This document shows, one piece after another, positions 13,086 to 27,585 of a stretch of 64,000 bases of DNA. A program made the translations under genes and the position numbers. A model generated the notes under the pieces. The model worked only from the letters and a program-made list of their open reading frames with translations. It was not told where the DNA came from and made no database searches. How positions within the stretch are numbered: the first letter of the stretch is position 1; the number at the start of each line of letters is the position of its first letter. The stretch lies in the IMG/VR virus record IMGVR_UViG_3300024503_000485, positions 155,445 to 219,444 of that record, one strand, 5' to 3'.

Positions 13086-13991
13086 ATGGCGGCCTATGAT
13101 TATATTAGCGTACCGGATTATAACAATATTAGAAATAAAATTTCTGGAGTAATGTCTACCGGGTCAGCCACACTTGGATACGGGCAGGCCTTACAATCTT
13201 CGTTGGTTGCAACTGGCGATGCTGTTACAAAGACACAATGGGATAATTTAAGATTTGATGTAGTTAATGCAATAGTGCATCAATCAGGTTCAGTTCCAAC
13301 AATAACTACAATTAACGAAGGCGAATTACTTAGATATGCAGCTGATCAGCCAAATTATCAATATAGCACATTAGCATCGTTAGCAGAAACAAATCGTTTT
13401 GATTTAGGAACAGGTCAGTATGTTACTGAAGCAGGAACATCAAGATCTAACTCTGTTTCTTTTAGTGGCGAGGTAGCAAGTACCTGTACAATATCATTTA
13501 CAAGTGCTGATCAAGCAAGATATTTTTTTAATTCTGGCGGAAAAATAAGATTTACTTCAGCATTTACTCAAGGTGCTTCTCCTACACAACAAGATAATTC
13601 TTGGAACACTACTTTATCTGCAACATCTGCAAGTCCTGCTGTGTTTGGGGGTAATTCTCCCGCAGTTAATTTTTATACTTTAACCAATTCTTATCAAACA
13701 TTTTATCAACTTTCATCATCATCTCCATATTCATCTAATAGATGGCAAATAGATGTATTATGTAATATTGGTAATAATAATTCAGGCGGCGCAACATCTA
13801 TAACTTTTAGATCTAGATGGATTGACGGATATACTGATCCCGGATTTCCTCCCCCTGGAGATGCAGTTAACGGAACAATGTCCTGGACCATAACCCATGT
13901 TAGAGCGTCCGGAGCTTTATATCCAAATTTAACACCTCAGAGTTTTAATGCTCCTTCTCCTGCTTATGCTGCACCTAGCACCATAGCATAA
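13086..13991 (+). CDS. Virion structural protein (paralog of 12155-13057)
   Basis: Same conserved blocks; GGAGGA RBS; TTAAATA at 13062-13068. Confidence 0.65.
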   Translation: MAAYDYISVPDYNNIRNKISGVMSTGSATLGYGQALQSSLVATGDAVTKTQWDNLRFDVVNAIVHQSGSVPTITTINEGELLRYAADQPNYQYSTLASLAETNRFDLGTGQYVTEAGTSRSNSVSFSGEVASTCTISFTSADQARYFFNSGGKIRFTSAFTQGASPTQQDNSWNTTLSATSASPAVFGGNSPAVNFYTLTNSYQTFYQLSSSSPYSSNRWQIDVLCNIGNNNSGGATSITFRSRWIDGYTDPGFPPPGDAVNGTMSWTITHVRASGALYPNLTPQSFNAPSPAYAAPSTIA

Positions 13992-14014
13992 TTTTTCACC
14001 CCATCTATACCCCA

Positions 14015-14022
14015 CATAAATA
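14015..14022 (+). promoter_or_regulatory. T4-like late promoter candidate (CATAAATA) heading the GT/radical SAM operon
   Basis: Intergenic TAAATA core, GGAG RBS, ATG 14050; downstream ORFs overlap or abut continuously to 26653. Confidence 0.6.
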
Positions 14023-14049
14023 ATATACTCATATTATTAGGGAGTATGT

Positions 14050-14400
14050 ATGGAATCTTTATTAACAAAAGCCTTAGAGTTTTCAAACTATAAGCAATCT
14101 CTAGCCATTCAACGCAAAGCGTTAAAAGAAAAAGTTGATGCAAAATTAACTTTTGGATTCAATGGCGGTATTTTTAAAATTAACAGAGAATTAATTAATT
14201 TTGTTCAATTTTTAATTGATCAAGATAGATCTACAGATGTAGTTCTTATCGACGCAAACGACAATCCTGTTTTAGTTAATGATTTGTCAAAATTCAAAGA
14301 TGAAATTTTTGACAGATACTTTACAGCGACCAACGAATATTATCAAGAATACGAAGTGATTAAAAAAGCTCGTTCTGTAGAAGCATTGGTGGATCTATGA
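14050..14400 (+). CDS. Hypothetical protein
   Basis: 116-aa ORF with GGGAG RBS and ATGA overlap with the next gene. Confidence 0.7.
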   Translation: MESLLTKALEFSNYKQSLAIQRKALKEKVDAKLTFGFNGGIFKINRELINFVQFLIDQDRSTDVVLIDANDNPVLVNDLSKFKDEIFDRYFTATNEYYQEYEVIKKARSVEALVDL

Positions 14401-15257
14401 AAAAAGGCGGCCTAATTTTTGCTCATAATAGCAGAGAAGTTGACTATGCTTTATTGGCAGTGATTTCTGGTGGCCTTGCAAAAAAGAATCTTGAAATTCC
14501 GTTTACTTTAGTAACAGATGATGCTACAATTGAATGGATGAAGACTTCAAATATTTGGGATAAAGCAAATGACGTTTTTGAAAACATTATTTCTACCCCA
14601 CGTCCAGAAACTCTGAACACAAGACGTTTAAATGACGGTAACGAATCGAAAACAATTCCTTTCATTAATGCCGATAGAGCATCGGTATGGGATCTAACAC
14701 CATATGATAGAACACTTCTTCTAGATAGCGATTATTTGATTTTTTCTAACGCCCTGAATAATTATTGGGATATTGATGAAAGTATTTTAATATCAAAATC
14801 TATGAATGATATTAGAGGTGATCGAATTGGTTTCTTAGATAAACATGTATCTGAAACAGGAGTTCATTTGTTTTGGGCTACCGCTGTCATTTTTACAAAA
14901 AACGAGGAAAGCAAAACATTTTTTGAATATGTAAAACATATTCGAAACAACTACGAACAATACGGTGACATTTACAGATTTAATCCTCATCAGTATAGAA
15001 ACGATATTTCTTTCAGCGTTGCAAAACATTTCTTAGAAGGTTTTACAACAGATACTTCAAATGCTTTACCGTCATTATTAACTACAACTGATAAAGATAT
15101 GTTAGCCGATGTTAAGGGAAATAAATTATACTTCCTAATAAATGATCCTTTAAATCAAGAAGCATTTACAGCATGTTCTATTAATAATACCGATGTTCAT
15201 GTAATGAATAAACAAAGCATTGTTAGAAATAAAGATAAATTGTTGGAGTTAATATGA
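14397..15257 (+). CDS. GT-A fold glycosyltransferase (GT8-like)
   Basis: TPYDRTLLLDSDYL DxD motif, WATAVIF, RND, C-terminal HVMNK. Confidence 0.7.
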   Translation: MKKGGLIFAHNSREVDYALLAVISGGLAKKNLEIPFTLVTDDATIEWMKTSNIWDKANDVFENIISTPRPETLNTRRLNDGNESKTIPFINADRASVWDLTPYDRTLLLDSDYLIFSNALNNYWDIDESILISKSMNDIRGDRIGFLDKHVSETGVHLFWATAVIFTKNEESKTFFEYVKHIRNNYEQYGDIYRFNPHQYRNDISFSVAKHFLEGFTTDTSNALPSLLTTTDKDMLADVKGNKLYFLINDPLNQEAFTACSINNTDVHVMNKQSIVRNKDKLLELI

Positions 15258-16093
15258 CATTTGGATATTTAATTGTAGTTGCCAAACACGAAACAATTGA
15301 CTACACAAAATTAGCCTATTCTTTGGCATTAAGTATTAAAAATACACAGAAGTGGGGTTATAATAATGTAGCTTTAGTTACAGATGATGTTTCTGCTGTA
15401 GAACAATTAAAAAGTCCTTGGGTATTTGATAAAGTAATTCCTTGGAACAAAGAAAAGGGATGGGACGGTCGATCATGGATGGATCATTTAACACCTTGGG
15501 ATAACACAATATGTTTAGATGCTGACATGTTGTTTACAAGAGATGTTAGTCATTGGGCAGAATATTTTATTAATAACTCAGAATTGTATGTAGCAAACAA
15601 AGCATTTACATACAGAGGAGAAGTTATTACAGGCGATTTTTATAGAAAAGCATTTGTAAAAAATAATTTGCCTAATTTATATTCTTTCTATACGTTCTTT
15701 AAGAAAGATAGCGAACTAGCAAAAGAATTTTTTACCTTAGCAAGACATATTATAAAAAATCCTAACGAATTTAAAAATACTTTCTTTCCAGATTTTAAAC
15801 CTAAAGTAATTGGAACCGATGAAGCATTTGCATTATCATCTAAAATTTTAGATATTACTGATCAAATTGCATATGATTTAGATTTTCCTAAAATTGTTCA
15901 CATGAAGCCAATGATTCAAAATTGGCCATGGCCGTCAGATAGATACACAGATCATGTAGGATTTTATTTCAATGTAAACAACGAACTTAAGATTGGAAAT
16001 TATAGACAATATGATGTAGTTCATTATGTTGAAAAAGAATTGATTACAGATGAAATTATCAGCATACAGGAAGAGAAATTATGGCAGAAATAA
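15254..16093 (+). CDS. GT-A fold glycosyltransferase (GT8-like), paralog
   Basis: TPWDNTICLDADML DxD motif, GTDEAF, VHMKP, VHYVEK. Confidence 0.7.
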   Translation: MTFGYLIVVAKHETIDYTKLAYSLALSIKNTQKWGYNNVALVTDDVSAVEQLKSPWVFDKVIPWNKEKGWDGRSWMDHLTPWDNTICLDADMLFTRDVSHWAEYFINNSELYVANKAFTYRGEVITGDFYRKAFVKNNLPNLYSFYTFFKKDSELAKEFFTLARHIIKNPNEFKNTFFPDFKPKVIGTDEAFALSSKILDITDQIAYDLDFPKIVHMKPMIQNWPWPSDRYTDHVGFYFNVNNELKIGNYRQYDVVHYVEKELITDEIISIQEEKLWQK

Positions 16094-16677
16094 TAGACTT
16101 TGACGAATGGTTAGCAAATTATAAACCGCCAGAAGTAAAATTTTACGCTGCATTTGATCCTAATACAGGCGATGTAACAGGAGTGTATCCGTCACACGCT
16201 CTAACAGATCAAAAAAATGTTGTAGAAATTGATCAAGAAACAGCACAATTAATTAATGAAGGCGCATTAAAATTAAATTCGTGTTTTGTTGATATTAGCT
16301 CAGGCAAATTTGAAATTGCAGAAATAAGAAGTCTTATAAAGATAGACGATGTGCTCCATAGGATTGTTGATAAAAAATGGTCTGATGTAGAAGACCCCGA
16401 TGTAATTGTTTCCTATGTAGAAGGAACAGACAAATTAGTTTTTGACCTTTCTCCTAAGTATAGAGAATTAAAAAGAAAGATTCACTGGGACGGAAGTACC
16501 GAGCTTTGTTTTTTTATTACAGAATATAACGATCCAAATATTGTTAGATTTATAGTAAAATTTAGTATCAGTGATTTAACAGAAAAACAAATTTCACTAA
16601 CCGGTTTACCTTTAGAAGGTAGATTTAGTGTTTACACAAGAAGATTATTCCCCAAATACGTGATCGAGACAAAATGA
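16081..16677 (+). CDS. Hypothetical protein
   Basis: 198-aa ORF overlapping both neighbours. Confidence 0.65.
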   Translation: MAEIIDFDEWLANYKPPEVKFYAAFDPNTGDVTGVYPSHALTDQKNVVEIDQETAQLINEGALKLNSCFVDISSGKFEIAEIRSLIKIDDVLHRIVDKKWSDVEDPDVIVSYVEGTDKLVFDLSPKYRELKRKIHWDGSTELCFFITEYNDPNIVRFIVKFSISDLTEKQISLTGLPLEGRFSVYTRRLFPKYVIETK

Positions 16678-17585
16678 AAGTTATTGAATTTGATGTTGTA
16701 TTTTTAAGTTATGATGAACCTAATGCAGACTTGCATTATGCGGACCTGTGTAATAAAGTACCTTGGGCAAAACGTATTCACGGTGTTAAAGGTTCAGACC
16801 ATGCACATAAAGCCGCAGCAGAAAGTAGTGACACTGATTGGTTTGTTACCGTCGATGCTGACAATATTGTAGATCCAAGATTTTTTAATCTCGATTTAAA
16901 AATGGATGATCCAAAGATACAGGTCTATGGATGGTGTGGCCGCAACGTTATCAATGGACTACGATATGGTAATGGTGGTTTAAAAATCTGGAAAAAAGAT
17001 TTTGTTCTTAACATGAAAACACATGAAAATTCTGATAGCGATAGAGGACAAGTTGATTTTTGCTGGGAAGATGGATACAAAAACTTTCCTTTAAGTTTTA
17101 GTGATAGCATTATTACAGGAAGTCCATTTCAAGCATGGAGAGCAGGATTCCGTGAAGGTGTTAAAATGACGTTGCTCGACGGAGTCAAAGTTCCTCCGGC
17201 TGAAATACAAGAACGCATTTGGTGGCATAACATTCATAGACTGCGTATGTGGTCTACGGTAGGCGCTCACGAAGAAAACGGTCTATATGCTGTATACGGT
17301 GCTAGACTAGGAACATGGATGGCTAATTGCACAGACTGGAATTATATAGAAGTTAGAGATTTTGAAATTCTTAGAGGAATCTGGAATCAATATGGACGTC
17401 CCTACGAAGAAGTAAACGGTGAAGGATTAGTTGATGCAACAAAGGACCTAGGTGAAAAAATTAAAGTTGGTTTAGGTTTGCACTGGCCTTATTTAGATCC
17501 TAACCAAAGCAAGTACACACTAGATTTATATAATGAAACTATGAATTTAAACGATACTTATTTTAGAATGCCCGAAAATGTATGA
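16674..17585 (+). CDS. GT-A-like glycosyltransferase
   Basis: DVVFLSYDEPNA..RIHGVKG..AH..WFVTVDADN..YGNGGLK..AWRAGFREGVK. Confidence 0.65.
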   Translation: MKVIEFDVVFLSYDEPNADLHYADLCNKVPWAKRIHGVKGSDHAHKAAAESSDTDWFVTVDADNIVDPRFFNLDLKMDDPKIQVYGWCGRNVINGLRYGNGGLKIWKKDFVLNMKTHENSDSDRGQVDFCWEDGYKNFPLSFSDSIITGSPFQAWRAGFREGVKMTLLDGVKVPPAEIQERIWWHNIHRLRMWSTVGAHEENGLYAVYGARLGTWMANCTDWNYIEVRDFEILRGIWNQYGRPYEEVNGEGLVDATKDLGEKIKVGLGLHWPYLDPNQSKYTLDLYNETMNLNDTYFRMPENV

Positions 17586-19845
17586 TATTTTTTATGTTTC
17601 AAAAAATTCCATTAACGACTATAACTGGAACTCAGTCAAGTCAAAATATCCCACAGCTAGAAAATTTGAAAACATAAATTCTTTTGATCAATTAAAAAAA
17701 CAAGCATTTACTAAAATGTTTTGGGTTGTGTGGGACGACCTTACCTTATTAGACAATCTTAATTTAAACACATACAGAGCTACCCAGTGGGACGATATGT
17801 ATGTTCATGTATTTAAAAATAGTGATCATTACGACGGAGTTTGTTTATTTCCTAAGTCAGTTACAATTTCTCAAAGAGAATTTGATAATCGGTTTTTTAC
17901 AGATAAAAAAGAAATAGATATTGTTGCTAGTATTCCACTAGGATATGATAAATTTAATATTACAACTTACGATGATTATCTAAACGCTGTTGAACAATCA
18001 AGTACAGACATGTTTTGGGCAATTTGGCCTGATGTAAATGTCAAAGAAGATTTTAAATTTAATTATAAAGTTCCTAAGCATAATTCTAATATTGTTCATA
18101 TTTTTAAAAATGGAGAATTTTTTGACGGCATTTGCTTATTTCCAAAAAATGTAAAAGTTTCTAAGAGAGAATTTTATCATAGATTTTTTGCAGAAAAAAA
18201 AGAAATAGATATTGTTGCTAGTATTCCAAAACAATACAACATCTATTCTCCTAAAACATTTGATGAGTATAAACAAATTACAGACGATATGTTTTGGATT
18301 GTGTGGCCTGAGGTAAAAATTATTAACAATGAAATTTTTGATTTATATTTTAGCCATCACAATACCTATGACAGAAGAGAAAATCATGTTTTTAAAAATT
18401 TGTGTAATTACGACGAATCTTACCTAAGCGGAATTTTGTTATGCAGCAAATTTAAACCTTTAACACAAGAAGAGTTTGATAAACAATATCCTACTGATAA
18501 AAAAGAATATAATATAATCGCTAGTAAATTTCAATATCCTATATATACAATCACATCTTACGAGCAATATTTAGATATATGTAAAACTGAATCTCAAAAT
18601 ATGTTTTGGTGTGTATGGCCAGAAATTAAAATATTAGATGATAAACTATTTGATTTGTATTTTGATCCAAATAGTGGGGCATTTGATTATGATAGAAAAG
18701 AAAATCATGTTTTTAAAAATTTATGTAACGACAAAGAATCTTTTCTAAACGGTGTAGTATTATTTTCTAAAGAAAAAATCATATCTAAAAAAGAATTTAA
18801 TAGAAGATTTTTAATTGATAAAAAAGAACATAATTTTGTAGCAAGTCGTTATGCGTATCCTGTTTACAATATTGATACTTATGACGATTACAAACAAATT
18901 ATAGACACCGAATCTCAACCTTTATTCTGGGCAATTTGGCCTGAAATAGAAATTATTGATTCTGAAATTTTTAATTTATATTTTGAACCTAATAATGGCG
19001 TATATGATTATGATAGAAATATCAATCATGTATTTCAGCATAAATTTAGAAACGAATTAACATATAACGGATTGATGTTAATGTCTACATCAACGCCAGT
19101 TAGTCCTAAAGAAATTGATTTTAGGTTTTTAATTAATAAAAAACAATATGAACAAGTTGTTTCTAAGCATAAAGACTATGATATAATATTTGTAAGTTAT
19201 AACGAACCTAATGCTGAAGAAAATTATAATAAACTAATTAACAAATTTCCAAGAGCTAAACGAGTACATGGTGTTAAAGGTATTCATCAAGCGCATATAA
19301 AGGCAGCTGAACTTGCCACAACAGACATGTTCTGGGTTGTTGATGCCGATGCACATATAATAGATGATTTTAATTTTAATCATCAGGCAACGCGATACGA
19401 AAAAGATGTTGTTCATGTGTGGAGAAGTAAAAATCCAATAAATGATTTAATATATGGTTATGGTGGAGTAAAACTATTACCAAGAAAATTAACATTAGAT
19501 ATGGATGTAAATACAGCCGACATGACAACATCGATTAGTAAAAAATTTAAAGCAATGCCGGAAGTCAGTAATATATCTGCATTCAATACAGATCCTTTTA
19601 ATACTTGGAAATCGGCATTTAGAGAATGTGTAAAACTTTCTAGTAGAACAATTGCTGGACAAGTTGATGAGGAAACACAAAAGAGATTAGACATATGGTG
19701 TTCTGTAGCAAAAGACAAATTTGCTAATGATGCACTTAGCGGTGCAATTGCAGGACGTAAGTACGGAGAAGAAAATAAAAACAATCCAGAAGCCCTTGCA
19801 AAAATTAATGATTTTGATTGGTTAAAAACACAATATGGAATTTAA
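17578..19845 (+). CDS. Repeat protein: five degenerate GT-like units plus a C-terminal intact GT-A-like domain
   Basis: About 100-aa repeats with FWxxW(D/P)(D/E)..HVFKN..G..LF..EF..R....KKE; the last domain has MFWVVDAD and resembles 16674-17585. Confidence 0.7.
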   Translation: MYDIFYVSKNSINDYNWNSVKSKYPTARKFENINSFDQLKKQAFTKMFWVVWDDLTLLDNLNLNTYRATQWDDMYVHVFKNSDHYDGVCLFPKSVTISQREFDNRFFTDKKEIDIVASIPLGYDKFNITTYDDYLNAVEQSSTDMFWAIWPDVNVKEDFKFNYKVPKHNSNIVHIFKNGEFFDGICLFPKNVKVSKREFYHRFFAEKKEIDIVASIPKQYNIYSPKTFDEYKQITDDMFWIVWPEVKIINNEIFDLYFSHHNTYDRRENHVFKNLCNYDESYLSGILLCSKFKPLTQEEFDKQYPTDKKEYNIIASKFQYPIYTITSYEQYLDICKTESQNMFWCVWPEIKILDDKLFDLYFDPNSGAFDYDRKENHVFKNLCNDKESFLNGVVLFSKEKIISKKEFNRRFLIDKKEHNFVASRYAYPVYNIDTYDDYKQIIDTESQPLFWAIWPEIEIIDSEIFNLYFEPNNGVYDYDRNINHVFQHKFRNELTYNGLMLMSTSTPVSPKEIDFRFLINKKQYEQVVSKHKDYDIIFVSYNEPNAEENYNKLINKFPRAKRVHGVKGIHQAHIKAAELATTDMFWVVDADAHIIDDFNFNHQATRYEKDVVHVWRSKNPINDLIYGYGGVKLLPRKLTLDMDVNTADMTTSISKKFKAMPEVSNISAFNTDPFNTWKSAFRECVKLSSRTIAGQVDEETQKRLDIWCSVAKDKFANDALSGAIAGRKYGEENKNNPEALAKINDFDWLKTQYGI
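17905..18228 (+). repeat. Intragenic direct repeat, 33 nt identical (17905-17937 and 18196-18228)
   Basis: aaaaaagaaatagatattgttgctagtattcca occurs twice, 291 nt (97 codons) apart; a second 24-nt pair lies at 18378-18401 and 18699-18722. Confidence 0.9.
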
Positions 19846-21253
19846 TAGAAATATAAAAGGTAATGAACTTAGAAAGATTGATGGAAAATATCAGTCTCGA
19901 TATCTATTAGATGCAGAATTTGTTCATAAGGAATTAAACGAAGTAAGTCCAAGTTTTTGTTTGGCCAAATGGTTTAATGTTAGTATACACATTCCGTCTG
20001 GAAGAACACATAGTTGTTATCATCCTAGAAGTCATGCAATTCCATTAGATGAAGTAAAGATCGATGTTAGTGCATTGCATAATACAAAATATAAAAAATC
20101 TCAACGTGCATTGATGTTACAGGGTATACGACCTAAAGAATGCGAATTTTGTTGGCAAATTGAAGATAGCGGAAACCAACTAAGCGATCGAGCATATCGA
20201 AGCAAAGATGTATGGGAACCAGGGTTAATTGATGAAGCATTAGAGCTTGGTTACGAGGGAAATGCTAAACCAAGATATGTTGAAGTAAATTTTAATCAAG
20301 CATGTAATTTTAAATGTAGTTATTGTAGCCCTCATCTTAGCACAGCATGGTATGATGAAATTAAAAAAGAAGGCCCGTACCTTTTAACTGACCGTGTGCA
20401 TAATGATATTCTATGGATTCAAAACGAATCACCAATCGACAATAGTCCTGAAAATCCTTATGTAAAAGCATTCTGGGAATGGCTTCCAGAAATTTATCCA
20501 ACCTTACAAACATTCCGCATGACTGGCGGAGAACCGCTTATGGATAAAAATACCTTTAGGATGTTTGAATATGTAAAAAATAATCCTAAAAGTGATCTTC
20601 ATTTAAGTATTACAAGTAATTGCTGTCCTCCAAAAGACCAATGGTCAAAATTTATGTCTAGTTTAAAAGAAATTACAGATGCAGAGGCTGTTGATCATTT
20701 TATGTTATTTTGTAGTTTAGATAGTTGGGGTAAGCAAGCAGAATATATACGTAATGGAATGGATTTTGAAATGTTAAAGGCAAACGTCACTGACTATCTT
20801 GCAAATAGTCAGAAACATTCACTTACTTTTATCATAACATTTAATGCTTTGAGTTATACTCGTATTGTTGAATATTTGCAGAACATTATTAAATTGAGAA
20901 GAAAATTTAGTAAACGTAGACAACTAATTTGGTTTGATATCCCTCCGCTCCATGATCCAGATTTTTTAAATCCCAAAGTAATGCCAGAAATGGTAACAGA
21001 ACTTAAATTGGCATTAAAATATATGTTAGAAAATAAAGAAGGTCGTGGTAATCAGTTTATGGGATTTAGCGACTTTGAAGTGAGTAAAGTTCGAAGATTA
21101 ATTGATTGGATTGAATCAGATACAGGATTTGACAAAGATAAAGCTATGAAAAATTTTTATGAATTTTTCTCAGAACACGATAGAAGACGAAATACAAATT
21201 TTTTAAATACATTTCCTGAACTAACAGATTTTTGGAATAGGTGTAAAGAATAA
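19835..21253 (+). CDS. Radical SAM protein with N-terminal Cys-rich (twitch/SPASM-like) domain
   Basis: CNFKCSYC, TGGEP; N-terminal C..SCYH..CEFC. Confidence 0.9.
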   Translation: MEFNRNIKGNELRKIDGKYQSRYLLDAEFVHKELNEVSPSFCLAKWFNVSIHIPSGRTHSCYHPRSHAIPLDEVKIDVSALHNTKYKKSQRALMLQGIRPKECEFCWQIEDSGNQLSDRAYRSKDVWEPGLIDEALELGYEGNAKPRYVEVNFNQACNFKCSYCSPHLSTAWYDEIKKEGPYLLTDRVHNDILWIQNESPIDNSPENPYVKAFWEWLPEIYPTLQTFRMTGGEPLMDKNTFRMFEYVKNNPKSDLHLSITSNCCPPKDQWSKFMSSLKEITDAEAVDHFMLFCSLDSWGKQAEYIRNGMDFEMLKANVTDYLANSQKHSLTFIITFNALSYTRIVEYLQNIIKLRRKFSKRRQLIWFDIPPLHDPDFLNPKVMPEMVTELKLALKYMLENKEGRGNQFMGFSDFEVSKVRRLIDWIESDTGFDKDKAMKNFYEFFSEHDRRRNTNFLNTFPELTDFWNRCKE

Positions 21254-22620
21254 TGGATGATAGAGTAAATTATATTAAAGGTGTTAGAGATCGTTTAAAC
21301 AAAATAGGTCCAGGTTTTTGTGCAATGAAATGGTTGCATCAAACTTTGTATCTTCACACCGGTGATAACCATAGTTGTTACCATCCTCGTCCTCATCACA
21401 TTCCATTAGATGAAATTAAAATAGATGCAAGTGCTTTACACAATACTAAATGGAAAAAACAACAACGTAAAAAAATGTTAGAAGGTGAAAGACCAGAAGA
21501 ATGTTATTATTGTTGGAATATTGAAGACTTGCCGGGAGAGCATATAAGTGATCGAATGATTCATAGTTCTAGCGATTTTTCAGAACCTTACATAGAAAAA
21601 TTAGCAGAATTACCATGGGACGCTCCGGTAAACCCACGCTATCTAGAAGTAAGTTTTGGTAACGGATGCAACTATCGCTGTGGTTATTGTTGCCCACAGG
21701 CTAGTACTATGTGGATGGAAGAGATCAAGAAACACGGTAATTATGATTTAACTTATAATCAATATGGTATTGAGTTTTTAAAAAATGGAACATATTATGG
21801 GCCTAAAGATGAAAACCCTTACATCGAAGCATTCTGGAAGTGGTGGCCAAGTTTACGTAATGATTTACATACTTTACGTATTACAGGCGGTGAACCATTA
21901 ATGAATCCTGGTGCTATGCAGTTTTTTGATTTACTAGAAGATGAGCCAGCTCCCCATTTAGAGATTACACTTAATAGTAATCTTGGAGTAACTTTTGATC
22001 GAGTTGATCGATTAATAGCTCGAGTAAAAAGTTTAATAGAACAGAAAAAAATTAGAAAGTTTAGTTTCTTTACTAGCATTGATAGCTGGGGAGAACAAGC
22101 AGAATATATGCGTACAGGATTAAAATGTGATCACTGGGAACGCAATATGAAAGAAGTAATTAAAGCCGGTGCAACGGTAAATCTAATGTGTACTTATAAC
22201 GTATTATGTGTAACTAATTTTCAAAAGTTATTACACAAAGTTATCGAATGGAGAAAAGAATACGGCAAGGAAGCTGTATCTTTTGATACACCATATTTAA
22301 AAGAACCGCCACACTGGATGATTAATATTTTGCCTGAAGAATTTATTAAACATCAAGAAGACACTTTAAAATTTATTGAAGATAATATGGATTGGTTTAC
22401 AGGCGTCGAATACGAAAAGTTTAAACGTGTAACAGATTACATGAAAGAAAATCCAGTTAGCGATTTAAAAATTCTTCAAGGAAGAAGAGATTTTTATAGT
22501 TTCTTTTCTGAAAATGATAGAAGATTAGGAACTAATTTATTAGAGGTTTTTCCAGAGTATAGTAACTTTTATAACTTATGTAAAAACATTTACGAAAATT
22601 ATGATAACAGAAACAAATAA
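21253..22620 (+). CDS. Radical SAM protein, close paralog of the preceding gene
   Basis: CNYRCGYC, TGGEP; N-terminal C..SCYH..CYYC; shared IPLDE.KID.SALHNTK and QAEY.R.G. Confidence 0.9.
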   Translation: MDDRVNYIKGVRDRLNKIGPGFCAMKWLHQTLYLHTGDNHSCYHPRPHHIPLDEIKIDASALHNTKWKKQQRKKMLEGERPEECYYCWNIEDLPGEHISDRMIHSSSDFSEPYIEKLAELPWDAPVNPRYLEVSFGNGCNYRCGYCCPQASTMWMEEIKKHGNYDLTYNQYGIEFLKNGTYYGPKDENPYIEAFWKWWPSLRNDLHTLRITGGEPLMNPGAMQFFDLLEDEPAPHLEITLNSNLGVTFDRVDRLIARVKSLIEQKKIRKFSFFTSIDSWGEQAEYMRTGLKCDHWERNMKEVIKAGATVNLMCTYNVLCVTNFQKLLHKVIEWRKEYGKEAVSFDTPYLKEPPHWMINILPEEFIKHQEDTLKFIEDNMDWFTGVEYEKFKRVTDYMKENPVSDLKILQGRRDFYSFFSENDRRLGTNLLEVFPEYSNFYNLCKNIYENYDNRNK

Positions 22621-23824
22621 AAATTCTTGGTGTGTTAATGCGTTCCATGGAATGAGCGCAAATAACAACGGAAGTTCTAAAATGTGTTGTATGATTATTG
22701 AAGAATACAACAGAATGAAAGAATTACAACCAATTTATTTTGTAGACAAAATGTCTATCGAACAAAATTTTAATAATCCTGTAGCAATACAAATTCGAAA
22801 AGATTTAGAAAACGGAATAAGAAATTATGCCTGCAAAAATTGTTGGGAAGAAGAAAATGCTGGACGTAAAAGTAAGCGTCTTCGAGATAATGAAATATAT
22901 TTTAGATCGATAGAAAGGGGAGAAAAACCATTTACCGGTCTTGCTAAGTTTGAATTAAATCTAGGAAATAATTGTAACATAAAGTGTAGAACCTGTGCTC
23001 CTCAGATTAGTTCAACATGGATGAAAGAAGATTACGATCTGCATCATTCAAAAATTTCTTATAAAGAATATGCAGAAATGATGAGAGTGTTTCATCAGAG
23101 CTACGACGACGAAAGTGTTTTCTGGGAAGATTTAAAAAATAATTTAGTCAATATTAGACAATTTGATTTTTATGGCGGCGAACCGTTTTTAAGTAAAAAG
23201 ATGTGGGAAATTCTAAGTATATGTGTTGACAAAGGATATGCTAAAGATATTGAATTGCATTATAATACTAACGGTACAACTTGGCCAGAAGATAAAATTT
23301 CTATGTTTAAACATTTTAAAGGTGTTAATTTATCTTTTAGTATTGACGGTATAGAAGAACAATTTGAATATATGAGATTTCCAGCAAAATGGAATGAAGT
23401 ATTAGAAAATATGAATAAGGCAAAAGAGCTTGCTAATAGTTTAAAAACTCTTAAAATTAGTTGGTGCATTACTTTAAGTACACTGAACATATATGACTTA
23501 CCTAAAACAATAAATTTTTATTACGATCATTTTTCTAGTTTTGGTTTTTATCTAAATTTAGTTCACGGACCCCGACATTATAATATTTCAACTCTCCCAA
23601 CAGATATTAAAGAAAAAATTATTCAACATATTAATGATGTTGTGCCTAAGACGCAGAATCAAGCATGGATGTATCTAGATGGCATTTTAAATTTTATAAA
23701 AAACGGACACTACGAGCCTTCAAGTTTTACTTCTCTAAAGGAAGTAACAAAAAAACACGATCAATATCGAGGACAAGAATTTAATAAAGTTTTTCCTGAC
23801 TATTCAAAAATTATAGGTATGTAA
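22601..23824 (+). CDS. Radical SAM protein with N-terminal Cys-rich domain
   Basis: CNIKCRTC, YGGEP, YNTNGT, SIDG; N-terminal C..MCC..CKNC. Confidence 0.9.
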   Translation: MITETNKNSWCVNAFHGMSANNNGSSKMCCMIIEEYNRMKELQPIYFVDKMSIEQNFNNPVAIQIRKDLENGIRNYACKNCWEEENAGRKSKRLRDNEIYFRSIERGEKPFTGLAKFELNLGNNCNIKCRTCAPQISSTWMKEDYDLHHSKISYKEYAEMMRVFHQSYDDESVFWEDLKNNLVNIRQFDFYGGEPFLSKKMWEILSICVDKGYAKDIELHYNTNGTTWPEDKISMFKHFKGVNLSFSIDGIEEQFEYMRFPAKWNEVLENMNKAKELANSLKTLKISWCITLSTLNIYDLPKTINFYYDHFSSFGFYLNLVHGPRHYNISTLPTDIKEKIIQHINDVVPKTQNQAWMYLDGILNFIKNGHYEPSSFTSLKEVTKKHDQYRGQEFNKVFPDYSKIIGM

Positions 23825-23826
23825 AA

Positions 23827-25092
23827 ATGAGTTTTTGGAATTTTAATGAATTAATACAAGTACATATTGAACTTACAAATCATTGTAATGCTGCTTGTCC
23901 TATGTGCGTAAGATTTTATAATTCTTCAGAGTTAATTAGACCAGATTTAAATTTAAGTCAAATTTCTTTAGAAGATTTTAAAAAATGGTTCCCTCAAGAA
24001 GTATTAGATAGAGTTAAACTTTGGTTATTCTGTGGCGTTCATGGAGATCCGTGTATGGCTAAAGATTTTTATGAAATATGCGAGTACATCATTAATAATA
24101 GTCCTGGGGTCATAGCTGTGCATACAAATGGCGGCATGAGAAATCCTGAATGGTGGGCAAAATTAGGTAATCTTTTTGCAAAAGGAAAAGCATCAAATCA
24201 ATATAGGCTTACTTTTTCCATTGACGGGTTAGAAGATACAAATCACATTTATCGAAGAAACGTTAAATGGGATAAACTTATAGCAAATGCACAAGCATTT
24301 ATTGATGCGGGTGGGAGAGCTCTTTGGGACTTTTTAATTTTTAAACACAACGAGCATCAACTAGATACTGCAAAAAAATTATCTGAGGATATGGGATTTA
24401 CTGAATTTGTTCCTAAAAAAGCATTAGGCGTTGATAATGGAACAGAATTAATATATATGGTAGCTCTTAATAAAGAAGGACAATTAGATTACTATATTGA
24501 AGCTCCTACAAATCCCAAAAATAGAAATTTAGAAAATCCAACAGGAATCCAACCTTTAAAATTTTATCCTTTTTCAAAAGATGATTATAATAAGATGAAA
24601 GAAAATTCAGAATTTAAAAATTCTTATTATAAAAGAACAGAAGAAATTGTTGATATAATAGCAAGTTCTAAATATGACGAACACGACTCGTGTAATATTA
24701 AGTGTAAATCGCATATTGATGATGGGTATAAACGTGGAAAAGAAATTTTTGTCGATAGTGCTGGTAACGTTATGCCTTGTTGTTATATTGGAACACATTT
24801 AAATGGAATTTATTCTGATCCTCCAAGTATGCAACTTGTTCGTAATTTAAATAATTATGGACCAGAAAAACTTAATTTAAATAACCATTCTTTAGAAGAA
24901 ATTTTATCAGCGGAGCATTTAGATAGATTATATGCAGACACATGGGATAAAACAACAAAAGAAGGAAAACTTGTTTATTGTTCTAAAACCTGCGGAACAT
25001 TTTCATCTATAGATAAAATTTTTACACATGAAATTGTTTTAAAAAATAGAAAAAAAAGATATTTAGAATCACAAAAACCAAATGAAAGTTGA
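23827..25092 (+). CDS. Radical SAM protein with C-terminal twitch/SPASM domain
   Basis: CNAACPMC, CGVHGDP, HTNGG, FSIDG; C-terminal IKC..GNVMPCC..CSKTC. Confidence 0.9.
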   Translation: MSFWNFNELIQVHIELTNHCNAACPMCVRFYNSSELIRPDLNLSQISLEDFKKWFPQEVLDRVKLWLFCGVHGDPCMAKDFYEICEYIINNSPGVIAVHTNGGMRNPEWWAKLGNLFAKGKASNQYRLTFSIDGLEDTNHIYRRNVKWDKLIANAQAFIDAGGRALWDFLIFKHNEHQLDTAKKLSEDMGFTEFVPKKALGVDNGTELIYMVALNKEGQLDYYIEAPTNPKNRNLENPTGIQPLKFYPFSKDDYNKMKENSEFKNSYYKRTEEIVDIIASSKYDEHDSCNIKCKSHIDDGYKRGKEIFVDSAGNVMPCCYIGTHLNGIYSDPPSMQLVRNLNNYGPEKLNLNNHSLEEILSAEHLDRLYADTWDKTTKEGKLVYCSKTCGTFSSIDKIFTHEIVLKNRKKRYLESQKPNES

Positions 25093-26653
25093 TGTATTAT
25101 ACTCCGGACAATTAAGATATGCTGAGGCATGTTCTCGACAAAAAGAATTTTTTAAAAATACTGAGTGTCGAAATGTTTTTAGTTTATTAGACATCGTACA
25201 AGATTCTCATGCAAAAATGGCATTACGATCTTCCTACATGTTTGATGCTGACAAAGATTTTCGATATGCTTTAAATTATATTACAGAACAATTGAATCCA
25301 GAGGTCACTGCTGTATATTCAAAATATCAAATTTCTGAATGGTTTCAAAATGCATATGGGGAAATAGATACCTATAAAGTCTATTATATTCAACACTTAT
25401 ATACATTCATCGAAGGATTAAAACAAACTAAAAATGATGTTGTTGTTTCAATAACAACAGATTTAATATTAGAAGGAGATTTAAATTCTTTTCTTATTGG
25501 AGTAGATTTAGAAACTCCTCAGGTTTATTGTCATTATAAAAATTTATTAATTCCGCATGTTATTATTTTAAACAATAAGGCAAGAGAAATAATTCTTAAT
25601 AAAAGCAGTGAGTTTTTATCTACATTTTTTACAACAAATCCTCCAGAAACTTGGTTCAAGGCTGAAACACTTTGGGAAAAACTTTTTGAATATTGTGGAA
25701 TAAAAATTAAAATATTAAAGACAATACATCAATGTAAGGTAAGACCCACAATGGTTATTACAGATTTAAAAAAATCTATTAATCAATTGAGTATTATGTT
25801 TGAAAATTGGAGAAAGTATAAAGATACCGCAAGTAAACAATCTAAATTTAAATTTGATAAAAAATTAATATCAAGGATTGTTGCTTATGGATGTAGTTAT
25901 ACAGCAGGAGATGAATTTTTAGATACTTTATATCGAGCCGATGCGGAAGAAATTAAAAAACGAAACATTAGAGAATGGTTTGATCTTAAAGTTAATTTTG
26001 ATAAAAATTTAATTGCAACCATTAATGAAAAACAAAGAAATATGGCTTGGCCTGCAATCTTAGCAAATAGATTATCGATGTTAATTGATAATAGAGCTAA
26101 AGCAGGAAATTCATTAGCAAATATAGTTTGGCAAATTGAAAAAGATTTTGCCAACGGAGATATTACTGAAAAAGATTTAATAATTGTTGGATTAACATCA
26201 TACGAAAGAAATATATATTTTTCACATAAAGAACCAGTTTCGGTTCTGATGCATATGAGAGAAAATTTTCCAAAACAATTTCAAAAGTATCAAGGACCAA
26301 TTGCGGATTTTAATAATTCTATGTTTATGTATTATTTTTATTACTTGTGTCTTTCACGACTAATACAATTATCATCAAACCATTTAAAAGGAAGATTGTT
26401 AATTGTTCCGTGTATTAACGACGACAATTATAAAAATTTTGATCCTGTGTTAGAAAAATACTTTCAAACAGATATTTTAAATTTTAGAGATGAATGTTTA
26501 AACAGCGAGTATTTTATTACTGATAAAAATCTTTATGATTTTGTTGAACTGCAAGAGGATGATATTCATGCTGGTGGCCATCCAAAACAAATCGTGCATG
26601 AAAGATTTGTTGACCACTTACTAGAGATTTTTCCAACTAAAGAAATTTCTTAG
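25082..26653 (+). CDS. Two-domain protein: GT-like N-terminal region plus C-terminal SGNH/GDSL-like domain
   Basis: N-terminal VLYSGQLR; C-terminal AYGCSYT..WP..NRAKAGNS..GGHP. Confidence 0.55.
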   Translation: MKVDVLYSGQLRYAEACSRQKEFFKNTECRNVFSLLDIVQDSHAKMALRSSYMFDADKDFRYALNYITEQLNPEVTAVYSKYQISEWFQNAYGEIDTYKVYYIQHLYTFIEGLKQTKNDVVVSITTDLILEGDLNSFLIGVDLETPQVYCHYKNLLIPHVIILNNKAREIILNKSSEFLSTFFTTNPPETWFKAETLWEKLFEYCGIKIKILKTIHQCKVRPTMVITDLKKSINQLSIMFENWRKYKDTASKQSKFKFDKKLISRIVAYGCSYTAGDEFLDTLYRADAEEIKKRNIREWFDLKVNFDKNLIATINEKQRNMAWPAILANRLSMLIDNRAKAGNSLANIVWQIEKDFANGDITEKDLIIVGLTSYERNIYFSHKEPVSVLMHMRENFPKQFQKYQGPIADFNNSMFMYYFYYLCLSRLIQLSSNHLKGRLLIVPCINDDNYKNFDPVLEKYFQTDILNFRDECLNSEYFITDKNLYDFVELQEDDIHAGGHPKQIVHERFVDHLLEIFPTKEIS

Positions 26654-26942
26654 TTTCGTCTGAAATGTCTTGTTTAAGACGTTCTACATCAACTTCAAAA
26701 TCTATTTTTTTAATAGTGTCGTGATATTCTTGCATTGTTTCTAATAGCTTATCGGCAACTTCTTCTGCATCAGAAACAGACAATAACTCTGCAACTTCTA
26801 TTTTCCAAACTCTGCCATTATCAAATTCTAATTTAATAGCATTAAGATAAGCGACCGGCATGGTGTTCATATACATATCCTCGAACACCTCCGGCCACTC
26901 TTTGATTAGATGCTTTGGTGGTTTAAAGAGACGCTTAGGCAC
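26637..26942 (-). CDS. Hypothetical protein
   Basis: 101-aa ORF; converges with and overlaps the + strand operon end. Confidence 0.65.
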   Translation of the reverse strand: MPKRLFKPPKHLIKEWPEVFEDMYMNTMPVAYLNAIKLEFDNGRVWKIEVAELLSVSDAEEVADKLLETMQEYHDTIKKIDFEVDVERLKQDISDETKKFL

Positions 26943-27585
26943 TTGCTTCTTCTTTAGCCTTAGTAGTCTTTTTAACTGGTGGATCTAATTCATCTGCTTG
27001 TTTACGTAGTCTTGCAGCTTCTTTATACATAGCATCTGCTTGACTGCGATAACTTTTAGCAAGGTCTTTATCAGTTAATGCTTCTGTAGTTGATGCTTGT
27101 GCTCTTACTGGAGCAGGAACATCTGGATCTACATTAGGAACAGCTTCTGATTTTTGTTGTTTCTTTTTAAAATCTTGATCTCTTGCTGGTGCGCCGGAAA
27201 CAAGATTTGATAATTCGTCAACGGTGCAATTTTTTTGTTCTGCGATAAGAACATTTAATTCAGACAACACAATATTGGTGCTAGACGTTGGAGTCATAAT
27301 AACCATATCAGTTGCAACTTTTTGTAATCTTCCGTCTGCTTGCATAGCTTGAAGCATAGGACGACCATCTGGAAACAATCGAGTATGCATGATTTCGCCA
27401 AACTCATTTACCTCTTGCCCCTGGTCGCTTTCAAGCAATCCCATCAGAGCATCGTGATAGGAATCAGTTAAGTTTGCTGTTCCTACTACAAGAGCTGATC
27501 CTGAATCGCCCGGTATTGTTCTAAATACGGTGATTACTTTCGCTCCAGTATTTTTCATTCTTCCGATGTGCTTGATTTGTCTCAT
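26935..27585 (-). CDS. Hypothetical protein
   Basis: 216-aa ORF, AAGGA RBS. Confidence 0.7.
   Translation of the reverse strand: MRQIKHIGRMKNTGAKVITVFRTIPGDSGSALVVGTANLTDSYHDALMGLLESDQGQEVNEFGEIMHTRLFPDGRPMLQAMQADGRLQKVATDMVIMTPTSSTNIVLSELNVLIAEQKNCTVDELSNLVSGAPARDQDFKKKQQKSEAVPNVDPDVPAPVRAQASTTEALTDKDLAKSYRSQADAMYKEAARLRKQADELDPPVKKTTKAKEEASA

What the first reader, a model, noticed from the sequence alone, without database searches (positions are those of the whole stretch)
17578..19845. Array of five pseudo-glycosyltransferase repeats ahead of one intact catalytic domain
Seen: the strand reading MFWVVDAD in the final domain reads MFWVVWDD, MFWAIWPD, MFWIVWPE, MFWCVWPE and LFWAIWPE in five upstream units of about 100 aa, so the first Asp of DxD is replaced by Trp each time. 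Identical 33-nt and 24-nt DNA blocks between units point to recent duplication or conversion. Inference: the inactive repeats could bind sugar or acceptor, or act as a molecular ruler for glycan length, with variable copy number.
Basis: partly seen in the sequence, partly recalled or inferred. Interest (0 to 1): 0.62.

Follow-up and report, generated by a model that had tools for sequence, protein, structure and literature searches.

The report
Dead glycosyltransferase repeats before live one
A river jumbo phage encodes a sugar-transferring enzyme whose active domain is preceded by five inactivated, shortened copies of itself; related phages carry from none to at least fifteen such copies, which suggests an adjustable arm built from dead enzyme domains, although its role is untested.

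Summary
Gene 17578..19845 (+) encodes 755 aa: five units of about 100 aa (MFWVVWDD, MFWAIWPD, MFWIVWPE, MFWCVWPE, LFWAIWPE), then a C-terminal domain with MFWVVDAD. The 33-nt and 24-nt identical blocks exist.

Profile comparison shows the units are homologous to the catalytic domain (u1 E 2e-23; internal units E 1.7e-9). AlphaFold2 models are confident (pLDDT 90-92). The C domain matches GT-A glycosyltransferases at Z 10-11.4. In an unbiased search, each unit alone matches only GT-A/NDP-sugar-transferase folds, at a modest Z up to 6.5.

The units lack the first Asp of DxD, the GG loop and the helical C-terminal part. Units 2-5 also lack the first beta-alpha element. They are almost certainly catalytically dead, yet they evolve under purifying selection.

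Copy number varies from 0 to at least 15 among relatives. Syntenic orthologous loci carry 1 or 5 units. Copy number changed at least 37 times on the catalytic-domain tree.

"Recent duplication" is not supported for this gene: units share 50-64% nt identity and are positional orthologues in relatives. It does occur in long arrays elsewhere.

The function of the array (spacer arm versus acceptor binding) and the acceptor remain inferred. The family is unannotated and, in its repeat-bearing form, seen only in phages.

The parts
17578..19845 (+). Whole gene, 755 aa: five degenerate GT-A units followed by one catalytic GT-A domain. The protein is soluble (no TM segment). The start overlaps the stop of the upstream paralogue, and the end overlaps the start of the first radical SAM gene.
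17578..17940 (+). Unit 1 (aa 1-121), motif MFWVVWDD (W52 at 17731-17733). It is a copy of the whole N-terminal GT-A core including beta1-alpha1. It forms an ancient clade present in nearly all phage members.
   Evidence: hhalign E 2e-23 vs C domain; secondary-structure order identical to the C-domain core; u1 clade in the unit tree
17941..18228 (+). Unit 2 (aa 122-217), MFWAIWPD (W150 at 18025-18027). Internal unit lacking beta1-alpha1.
18229..18531 (+). Unit 3 (aa 218-318), MFWIVWPE (W243 at 18304-18306).
18532..18852 (+). Unit 4 (aa 319-425), MFWCVWPE (W347 at 18616-18618). Modelled together with unit 5; it aligns on its own to GT-A enzymes.
   Evidence: model pLDDT 92.4, pTM 0.82; pdb_via_wide Z up to 6.5 over model residues 1-108
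18853..19170 (+). Unit 5 (aa 426-531), LFWAIWPE (W454 at 18937-18939).
   Evidence: pdb_via_wide Z about 6 over model residues 109-213
19171..19587 (+). Catalytic GT-A core (aa 532-670). It carries YDIIFVSYNEPNA (beta1), DxD = D589-A590-D591 (19342-19350), the HVWRSKNP motif and the YGYGGVK loop.
   Evidence: Z 10-11.4, rmsd about 3 A, about 136 residues aligned to B4GALNT1, WrtF, SunS/ThuS, A64R, A197 and IspD; weak Pfam GT2 hit; invariant residues in A1 and A2
19588..19845 (+). C-terminal helical subdomain (aa 671-755) with the invariant W677, F681-R682-E683 and R703-L704. No unit has it.
17905..17937 (+). 33-nt block, copy 1 (codons for KKEIDIVASIP at the end of unit 1).
   Evidence: identical in the orthologous gene on L009
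18196..18228 (+). 33-nt block, copy 2 (end of unit 2). The mosaic edge against contig L009 lies here: the first difference is at 18195.
18378..18401 (+). 24-nt block, copy 1 (codons for ENHVFKNL in unit 3).
18699..18722 (+). 24-nt block, copy 2 (unit 4).
16674..17585 (+). Upstream paralogue (303 aa) of the catalytic domain, with an intact DAD motif. It is conserved next to the C-domain gene in RsoM2USA and in Bdellovibrionota genomes.
14397..16093 (+). Two distantly paralogous genes (286 and 279 aa) with aligned DSD/DAD motifs. They are probably GT8-like GT-A enzymes (a lead only).
   Evidence: syntenic in L005, L006, L009 and RsoM2USA
19835..25092 (+). Four tandem radical SAM genes. Three reach the NF033640 N_Twi_rSAM cut-off; the fourth is weaker.

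Best explanation
Shown or strongly supported. The gene encodes a soluble GT-A (GT2-like, DxD-type) glycosyltransferase of an uncultured riverine jumbo myophage. Its DNA polymerase is closest to those of Phosso, Atu_ph07 and Rak2-like phages. The catalytic domain (aa 532-755) is preceded by five degenerate copies of its own GT-A core. Unit 1 copies the whole N-terminal core. Units 2-5 are shorter and lack the first beta-alpha element, which in GT-A enzymes binds the nucleotide. All five units have Trp in place of the first Asp of DxD. All lack the YGxGG loop, the DMTTSIS segment and the helical FRE subdomain, so they should be catalytically dead. They are not decaying: dN/dS is about 0.1-0.3, like the catalytic domain. 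They are predicted to fold as compact mini GT-A domains with a fixed interface between neighbours. The family evolved from 0 units (bacteria, RsoM2USA) to 1 unit (the commonest phage form) to arrays of 4-15 or more. Copy number changed many times, and some lineages show recent tandem duplications. Inferred. The array is a non-catalytic arm or scaffold between a conserved N-terminal unit and the catalytic domain. It would set the enzyme's reach or register on a long or repetitive acceptor. The enzyme would act in a late-operon glycan pathway with three other GT-like proteins and four radical SAM enzymes, encoded directly after the tail-fibre genes. The acceptor is most likely a virion fibre or capsid protein, or a host envelope glycan. 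In-frame copy-number change probably arises by unequal recombination at the conserved DNA blocks that end each unit.
For: Anatomy and homology. Fold: full-length model pLDDT 89.7. The C domain matches GT-A enzymes at Z 10-11.4. All Foldseek hits are GT-A glycosyltransferases. The u4+u5 model has pLDDT 92.4 and pTM 0.82. Its top 50 hits among 48,161 chains are all GT-A/NDP-sugar-transferase folds, one unit per hit. Missing catalytic parts: alignments; DxD-column statistics (C domain DGD/DAD in nearly all; u1 WDD; internal units WPE/WPN/WPD or P/F). Selection. Copy number: 4-10 units in long homologues; 1 unit in most short ones; 0 units in RsoM2USA and Bdellovibrionota; up to 15 units in cluster representatives; syntenic loci with 1 versus 5 units; at least 37 changes on the C-domain tree against 95 for shuffled labels. 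Independent expansions and recent duplication. Units occur only N-terminal to this C domain. Glycan context: neighbouring GT-like genes and radical SAM genes; nucleotide-sugar genes next to the 10-unit homologue. The gene is present in metatranscriptome libraries.
Against: No activity, donor, acceptor or binding partner is known. The Pfam GT2 hit is below its cut-off (19.7 vs 23.3 bits). The units' structural matches are modest (Z up to 6.5), and Foldseek alone gave no E below 1e-3. IspD-type nucleotidyltransferases score about as well as glycosyltransferases for the C domain. The spacer reading rests on architecture and predicted rigidity only. I had no model coordinates and could not measure length or surface conservation. 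Conserved polar residues in the units (His of HVF, KKE, Glu of EF) could equally line a binding site. Unit 1 keeps two acidic residues (WDD). The structures are predictions.
Confidence: 0.55

Rival explanations
1. The units are acceptor- or glycan-binding modules (lectin-like, descended from a sugar-handling fold). More copies give higher avidity or processivity on a repetitive polymer. Copy number would tune binding strength rather than distance.
For: The units descend from a carbohydrate-active domain. Polar residues are conserved in all units: H of HVF, FKN, KKE and E of EF. The units are under purifying selection. They are never separated from the catalytic domain.
Against: The former donor cleft is altered by a bulky Trp/Pro/Phe, and in units 2-5 its nucleotide-binding beta-alpha is deleted. 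Most invariant residues are aromatic, Gly or Leu core positions or lie at unit junctions. No binding data exist.
Confidence: 0.25
2. The array is an oligomerisation or assembly scaffold. It could let the enzyme dock on the paralogue g303, on the other GT-like proteins or on the virion, so the units act as protein-protein interfaces of a multi-enzyme complex.
For: Conserved operon with a paralogue and two other GT-like genes. Pseudo-GT partners of active GTs are known in other systems (own knowledge; CHSY3-CHPF appears among the structural hits).
Against: The partner genes stay constant while unit number ranges from 0 to 15. Forms with 0 units coexist with the same paralogue. No complex prediction was run.
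Confidence: 0.1
3. Some units, above all unit 1 with WDD and in some relatives an intact SYxEPxA motif, still bind nucleotide or metal and act as regulatory or second catalytic sites.
For: Unit 1 keeps two acidic residues at the DxD position in 73% of members. Some short forms keep the N-terminal YQEPSADANY-type motif in unit 1 (P0204, P0229).
Against: Unit 1 lacks the YGxGG loop, the DMTTSIS segment and the whole FRE helical subdomain, which are invariant in the catalytic domain. In this window unit 1 reads VSKNSINDYNW instead of SYNEPNA.
Confidence: 0.07
4. The units are neutral leftovers of slippage or duplication with no function, or an assembly artefact.
For: Natural forms with 0 units exist, so catalysis does not need the units.
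Against: dN/dS is 0.08-0.27 in units 3-5. Positional orthology is kept across proteins 56-76% identical. Thousands of homologues keep open frames. DNA unitigs from two runs tile the gene without differences. Models are high-confidence.
Confidence: 0.03

Closest known systems
Two-domain GT-A enzymes such as E. coli K4 chondroitin polymerase K4CP (PDB 2z86/2z87), the top Foldseek hit
   Same: Tandem GT-A domains in one polypeptide. Best Foldseek matches to the full-length model (E 8e-6). The domains carry DxD motifs.
   Different: K4CP has two active domains with different donors (own knowledge). Here only the last domain keeps DxD, and up to 15 truncated dead copies precede it. Sequence identity is about 9%.
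Pseudo-GT partners of active GTs: CHPF in the human CHSY3-CHPF complex (PDB 9q8z); Cosmc/C1GALT1C1 (own knowledge)
   Same: A GT-A-derived module that has lost catalytic residues and accompanies an active GT-A. 9q8z appears among the structural hits for both the C domain and a unit.
   Different: Those are single full-size domains or separate proteins. Here the dead modules are cut to about 100 aa, fused in cis and amplified in tandem with variable number.
Small viral GT-A enzymes: PBCV-1 A64R (2p72/2p73), STIV A197 (2c0n), Mimivirus R699 collagen glucosyltransferase (9dyt; PMC12279948)
   Same: Virus-encoded GT-A fold with DxD. Z 9.2-10.1 to the C domain. A64R glycosylates the major capsid protein, according to its PDB title.
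   Different: No repeat array, no detectable sequence similarity, and a different C-terminal subdomain.
GT-A enzymes with non-catalytic C-terminal tandem domains, such as S. aureus TarS (5tz8) and L. monocytogenes RmlT (8bz4)
   Same: A GT-A catalytic domain joined to repeated non-catalytic modules thought to position or oligomerise the enzyme (own knowledge). Both are structural hits.
   Different: Their accessory domains are unrelated folds placed C-terminally and fixed in number. Here the accessory modules derive from the catalytic fold itself, sit N-terminally and vary in number.
Host-recognition clusters of aquatic T4-like myophages (pelagimyophages), with tail fibres, glycosyltransferases and radical SAM cassettes (PMC7029224)
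   Same: The same kind of neighbourhood: tail-fibre genes followed by several GTs (GT8 dominant) and variable radical SAM cassettes in a mosaic region.
   Different: That paper describes neither this protein family nor any repeat array. The present phage is a jumbo phage of another lineage.
Ralstonia phage RsoM2USA gp348 and gp350 (MG752970), the only hit among 50,697 deposited phage genomes
   Same: gp348 is 45% identical to the C domain and gp350 is 41% identical to the paralogue g303. The surrounding gene order is the same.
   Different: gp348 is the catalytic domain alone (233 aa, no units). Both are annotated as hypothetical protein.

Membership tests
GT-A fold glycosyltransferase (GT2-like): C-terminal domain | Rossmann-like alpha/beta/alpha GT-A fold | tested here: met
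   Predicted model only. Z 10-11.4, rmsd about 3 A, about 136 residues aligned to B4GALNT1, WrtF, SunS/ThuS, A64R and A197. All Foldseek hits are GT-A enzymes.
GT-A fold glycosyltransferase (GT2-like): C-terminal domain | DxD metal/diphosphate motif at the end of the central strand | tested here: met
   D589-A590-D591. D589 and D591 are invariant in A1 and A2. DGD or DAD occurs in nearly all family members.
GT-A fold glycosyltransferase (GT2-like): C-terminal domain | Score above the Pfam Glycos_transf_2 (PF00535) gathering cut-off | tested here: not met
   19.7 bits against a cut-off of 23.3 (E 9e-4). Only 8 of 35 members hit PF00535 and 6 hit PF13641, all below the cut-off. This is a remote relative, not a Pfam GT2 member.
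GT-A fold glycosyltransferase (GT2-like): C-terminal domain | Transfer of a sugar from a nucleotide-sugar donor | not testable with these tools
   Needs an enzyme assay. IspD-type nucleotidyltransferases share the fold and score similarly. The N-terminal SYNEPNA motif and DxD favour a glycosyltransferase (sequence plus own knowledge).
GT-A fold: repeat units 1-5 | GT-A-like fold | tested here: inconclusive
   The units are homologous to the C-domain core. In pdb_via_wide, all top 50 of 48,161 chains are GT-A/NDP-sugar-transferase folds, with each unit aligned separately over about 100 residues. But the best Z is 6.5 and Foldseek gave no E below 1e-3. Units 2-5 lack beta1-alpha1.
GT-A fold: repeat units 1-5 | DxD motif and catalytic apparatus | tested here: not met
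   The first Asp is Trp in all five units. Across the family it is W, P or F. No unit has the YGxGG loop, the DMTTSIS segment or the FRE helical subdomain.
Tandem-repeat protein with variable copy number | Head-to-tail homologous units whose number differs between orthologues | tested here: met
   Units follow one another without linkers. Counts range from 0 to 15. Syntenic loci carry 1 versus 5 units.
Concerted evolution or recent duplication of the units in this gene | Units within the protein more alike than orthologous units in relatives | tested here: not met
   Units are 28-50% identical at aa level and 50-64% at nt level. In the unit tree they group by position across relatives. The feature is met in other members: P0007, P0087, P0103, P0110 and P0117.

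The most novel reading that the evidence does not exclude
Phages have turned dead copies of an enzyme's own catalytic fold into a rigid arm whose length can evolve. Unequal recombination at the conserved roughly 30-nt block that ends every unit adds or removes units in frame. That would set how far from an anchoring point the live glycosyltransferase places sugar on a virion fibre or envelope polymer. Unit number would then be a heritable dial for glycan position or length, and so for host range or defence evasion.
Probability: 0.15. Interest if true: 0.8.

Novelty: new variant of a known kind. Interest (0 to 1): 0.58.

Why it matters
Multi-domain glycosyltransferases and single pseudo-GT partners are known. 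A tandem array of 1 to 15 or more truncated, inactivated copies of the enzyme's own GT-A core, conserved under selection and variable between orthologues, has no description in the libraries and papers I could search: Pfam, PHROGs, NCBIfam, PDB, BFVD names and full-text papers.

It would be a clear natural case of pseudoenzyme domains reused as building blocks. It offers a ready-made truncation series, because nature supplies 0-, 1-, 4-, 5-, 6- and 10-unit forms, to test how accessory length affects a glycosyltransferase.

The family has thousands of sequences in aquatic metagenomes. It belongs to a conserved but wholly unannotated glycan module (four GT-like genes with radical SAM enzymes) next to the tail-fibre genes of jumbo phages. 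Knowing its product would bear on phage virion glycosylation or host-surface modification.

Tried and rejected
- PHROGs and NCBIfam gave nothing for this protein or its four upstream neighbours. Pfam at E up to 10 gave nothing for the neighbours.
- A PDB search by sequence profile gave only a chance hit at E 0.42.
- blastn of the locus against 50,697 phage genomes found no match.
- I asked whether RsoM2USA_349 (473 aa, just upstream of the catalytic-domain gene) is a split-off repeat array. It is not: there is no significant match to the units. Its FWNWWPELYPTLDTFRITGGEPLL stretch is close to the AFWEWLPEIYPTLQTFRMTGGEPLM stretch of the window's first radical SAM protein, read by eye.
- I checked the 'moraphage' paper (PMC12619734) as a possible description of this lineage. 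It mentions four GT orthogroups only in general terms, with no radical SAM, RsoM2USA or Atu_ph07.
- Recent duplication or conversion as the cause of the 33/24-nt blocks in this gene was rejected.
- I looked for copy-number polymorphism within the population using contigs of four runs. The joints listed have short sides (21-41 nt), come from contigs with several differences, and fit co-occurring relatives. They give no evidence for or against, because contigs drop rare variants.
- Foldseek with the two-unit model alone found no hit below E 1e-3. The exhaustive aligner was needed.
- Complex prediction was not run, because I make no specific binding claim.
- I had no access to model coordinates. 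Arm length, burial of the Trp and surface conservation could not be measured.
Full report
**1. What is there**

The window is the last 64 kb of a 219,444-bp IMG/VR virus record that CheckV rates 62% complete. The region carries tail-fibre-like genes, including a Collar domain at 4200-6287, and a family B DNA polymerase. That polymerase is closest (44-51% identity) to those of Sinorhizobium phage Phosso, Agrobacterium phage Atu_ph07 and Rak2-like E. coli jumbo phages. Near-identical DNA occurs in riverine metagenomes.

The finding is one ORF, 17578..19845 on the + strand, 755 aa. It overlaps its neighbours at both ends and has no predicted membrane segment.

**2.

The exact 33-nt blocks (17905/18196) and 24-nt blocks (18378/18699) exist. 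At DNA level there are five repeat copies spaced 291-321 nt.

Homology is statistically secure:
- The C domain as a query hits unit 1 (E 1.3e-10) and unit 2 (E 3.1e-8).
- An HMM built from the five units also detects the catalytic domain in every homologue.
- Profile-profile comparison gives u1 vs C domain 99.6% (E 2e-23, 97 columns), internal units vs C domain 96.3% (E 1.7e-9) and internal units vs u1 99.9% (E 3e-31).
- In these alignments the Trp occupies the column of the first Asp of DxD.

**3. Structure**

The full-length AlphaFold2 model, built from 36 five-unit homologues, has mean pLDDT 89.7 and pTM 0.64.

The catalytic domain:
- Residues 531-670 align to solved GT-A enzymes at Z 10-11.4, rmsd about 3 A, about 136 residues. 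The matches include B4GALNT1, WrtF fucosyltransferase, SunS/ThuS, PBCV-1 A64R, STIV A197 and TarP.
- IspD-type cytidylyltransferases, which belong to the same fold class, score similarly.
- Every significant Foldseek hit is a GT-A glycosyltransferase.
- Recurrent weak Pfam hits are to GT2 families only, all below cut-off.
- An N-terminal SYNEPNA strand, an invariant DxD, a YGYGGVK loop, a DMTTSIS segment and a helical subdomain with an invariant FRE complete a conserved active-site-like set.

The units:
- Unit 1 has the same order of secondary-structure elements as the catalytic core.
- Units 2-5 have the same order minus the first strand and helix.
- A separate model of units 4+5 has pLDDT 92.4 and pTM 0.82.
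- In an exhaustive comparison with 48,161 solved chains, its top 50 matches are all GT-A or NDP-sugar-transferase folds. Each unit aligns on its own over about 100 residues, with best Z 6.5.
- That Z is modest, and Foldseek alone found nothing significant. The fold assignment for the units therefore rests on the homology plus this one-sided hit list.

**4. The units are dead but maintained**

All five units lack the first Asp of DxD, the GG loop, the DMTTSIS segment and the helical subdomain. Units 2-5 also lack the element that binds the nucleotide in GT-A enzymes (sequence and models; the role of that element is from own knowledge).

Across the family the DxD column varies as follows:
- Unit 1: W in about 95% of members (WDD in 73%).
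- Internal units: W, P or F (WPE in 47%).
- Catalytic domain: DGD or DAD in nearly all.

Against the nearest available orthologous gene (L009), dN/dS is 0.08, 0.12 and 0.27 for units 3-5, compared with 0.16 and 0.32 for the two parts of the catalytic domain. dS is saturated, so these values are rough.

Contigs from metatranscriptome libraries cover parts of the gene without differences. This is consistent with transcription but does not exclude DNA carry-over.

**5. Copy number varies**

- The word-index search found more than 2,381 long homologues. Among the best 120, the number of dead units is 4 (14 proteins), 5 (79), 6 (20), 7 (1), 8 (2), 9 (2) or 10 (3).
- The catalytic domain alone retrieves more than 5,300 proteins. 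Most of the best 120 are about 350 aa, meaning unit 1 plus the catalytic domain.
- Ralstonia phage RsoM2USA gp348, the only hit among deposited phages, is the catalytic domain alone. So are the homologues in Bdellovibrionota genomes.
- A profile of 24 units searched against 1.84 billion cluster representatives finds only 163 clusters, with up to 15 detected units. Every complete protein that has units ends in this catalytic domain.
- Two syntenic contigs with the same neighbouring genes carry a 1-unit (343 aa) and a 5-unit (740 aa) orthologue.
- On a tree of 212 catalytic domains, unit number changes at least 37 times, against about 95 for shuffled labels.

**6. How the arrays evolve**

In a tree of 163 units, the catalytic domains form one clade and unit 1 forms another, ancient clade. 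The internal units of this protein group by position with those of relatives 56-76% identical. So this array is old and stable.

Within this gene the units share only 50-64% nt identity. Identical codons at identical residues are frequent in all pairs because of the A+T-rich codon bias. The u1 block is identical in the relative's gene. The 33/24-nt blocks therefore do not indicate recent duplication here.

Long arrays in other lineages cluster within each protein. P0007 has a 230-nt exact repeat and units up to 90% identical at nt level. This means independent and partly recent tandem expansions.

The window and contig L009 are 100% identical from 13262 to 18194 and only 57-84% identical afterwards. 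The edge lies at the second 33-nt block. The same variant is a separate unitig in the riverine DNA runs. This is either a recombination junction at the conserved unit-end block or an assembly chimera. If real, it shows that these blocks can serve as crossover points, which would also explain in-frame gain and loss of units (inference).

**7. Context and likely role**

The gene order is conserved in relatives and in RsoM2USA: tail fibres, a 116-aa gene, g286, g279, g198, g303 and then this gene.
- g303 is a paralogue of the catalytic domain with an intact DAD.
- g286 and g279 are distant paralogues with aligned DSD/DAD motifs and a GT8-like lead.
- Four radical SAM genes follow.
- The pair of g303-like and C-domain genes occurs in Bdellovibrionota genomes. 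It sits next to GT2 genes in L026 and next to an N-twitch radical SAM gene in L018.
- The 10-unit homologue lies beside DegT aminotransferase, UDP-glucose dehydrogenase, epimerase and acetyltransferase genes.

All of this points to synthesis of a modified glycan. The acceptor is unknown. The position after the fibre genes suggests virion proteins or the host envelope, as proposed in general for such clusters in aquatic myophages (PMC7029224).

I infer that the dead units form an arm or scaffold between the conserved unit 1 and the catalytic domain, for three reasons. Only the internal units vary in number. The predicted interface between units is fixed. The old donor cleft is plugged rather than kept. 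A multivalent acceptor-binding role is the main rival, and nothing here separates the two.

**8. Novelty**

The protein has no significant Pfam hit, PHROG or NCBIfam family. The two clear BFVD matches are 'Uncharacterized protein', and the nearest Atlas clusters are all viral and unnamed. Full-text searches found no description.

Note that 'pseudo-glycosyltransferase' is already used for VldE-type enzymes, so I avoid that term here.

I rate this a new variant of a known kind: a multi-domain GT-A enzyme with pseudo-GT modules, unusual for its self-derived, truncated modules amplified in tandem.

Noticed in passing
window 13262-27200 vs L009; edge at 18195: The window and an ENA contig are 100% identical for 4.9 kb up to 18194, then only 57-84% identical. 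The edge sits at the second 33-nt block. The variant is a separate unitig (depth about 11) in the same riverine DNA runs. This is either a recombination mosaic or an assembly chimera.
   Followed up: partly
window 19471-19812 (aa 632-745 of the gene): P0003, a 98%-identical homologue from another contig, is identical to the window protein up to aa 631. All 15 of its differences lie in aa 632-745. This is a second mosaic edge inside the gene.
   Followed up: no
window 19835-25092: Four tandem radical SAM genes. Three reach the NF033640 'N-terminal twitch' cut-off. Their number differs between related contigs, and one sits between the two GT paralogues in RsoM2USA.
   Followed up: partly
L018:5039-8203 and L026:5998-7649: Bdellovibrionota genomes, including a 2.9-Mb chromosome, carry the g303-like gene next to a unit-less C-domain gene. 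In L018 an N-twitch radical SAM gene is adjacent; in L026 GT2 genes are adjacent. The module is therefore cellular as well as viral.
   Followed up: partly
window 14397-16093: Two adjacent genes (286 and 279 aa) are distant paralogues (23% identity, E 1e-6) with aligned DSD/DAD motifs. Atlas features place g286 near GT8/Mannosyl_trans3 clusters. Neither gene has a Pfam hit.
   Followed up: partly
L010:1-8928: The 10-unit homologue P0007 lies beside three radical SAM/SPASM genes and beside DegT aminotransferase, UDP-glucose dehydrogenase, NAD-epimerase and hexapeptide acetyltransferase genes. This is a nucleotide-sugar pathway.
   Followed up: no
P0102, P0114, P0262, P0264 (N-terminal about 145 aa): Some long-array members have an extra N-terminal segment of about 145 aa before unit 1, with unit-like motifs (FVWIVD, HIFPY, VKLVP). 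It may be a further, more degenerate unit.
   Followed up: no
L011-L017, L023 (genome-contig hits): Several homologues 56-65% identical sit on contigs binned into MAGs of unrelated phyla (Sphingobacteriaceae, Crocinitomicaceae, Neomarinimicrobiota, Rickettsiales, Bifidobacterium). These are probably phage contigs swept into bins, and so are not evidence for a host.
   Followed up: no
window about 26650: Gene orientation and GC skew switch sign here. The + strand block of fibres, GT-like genes and radical SAM genes ends, and a long - strand block that includes the DNA polymerase begins.
   Followed up: no
window 17788-17790 (aa 71): The collection's own copy of this protein (P0002, from a 40-kb contig) differs from the window translation by a single residue, W71C.
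   Followed up: no
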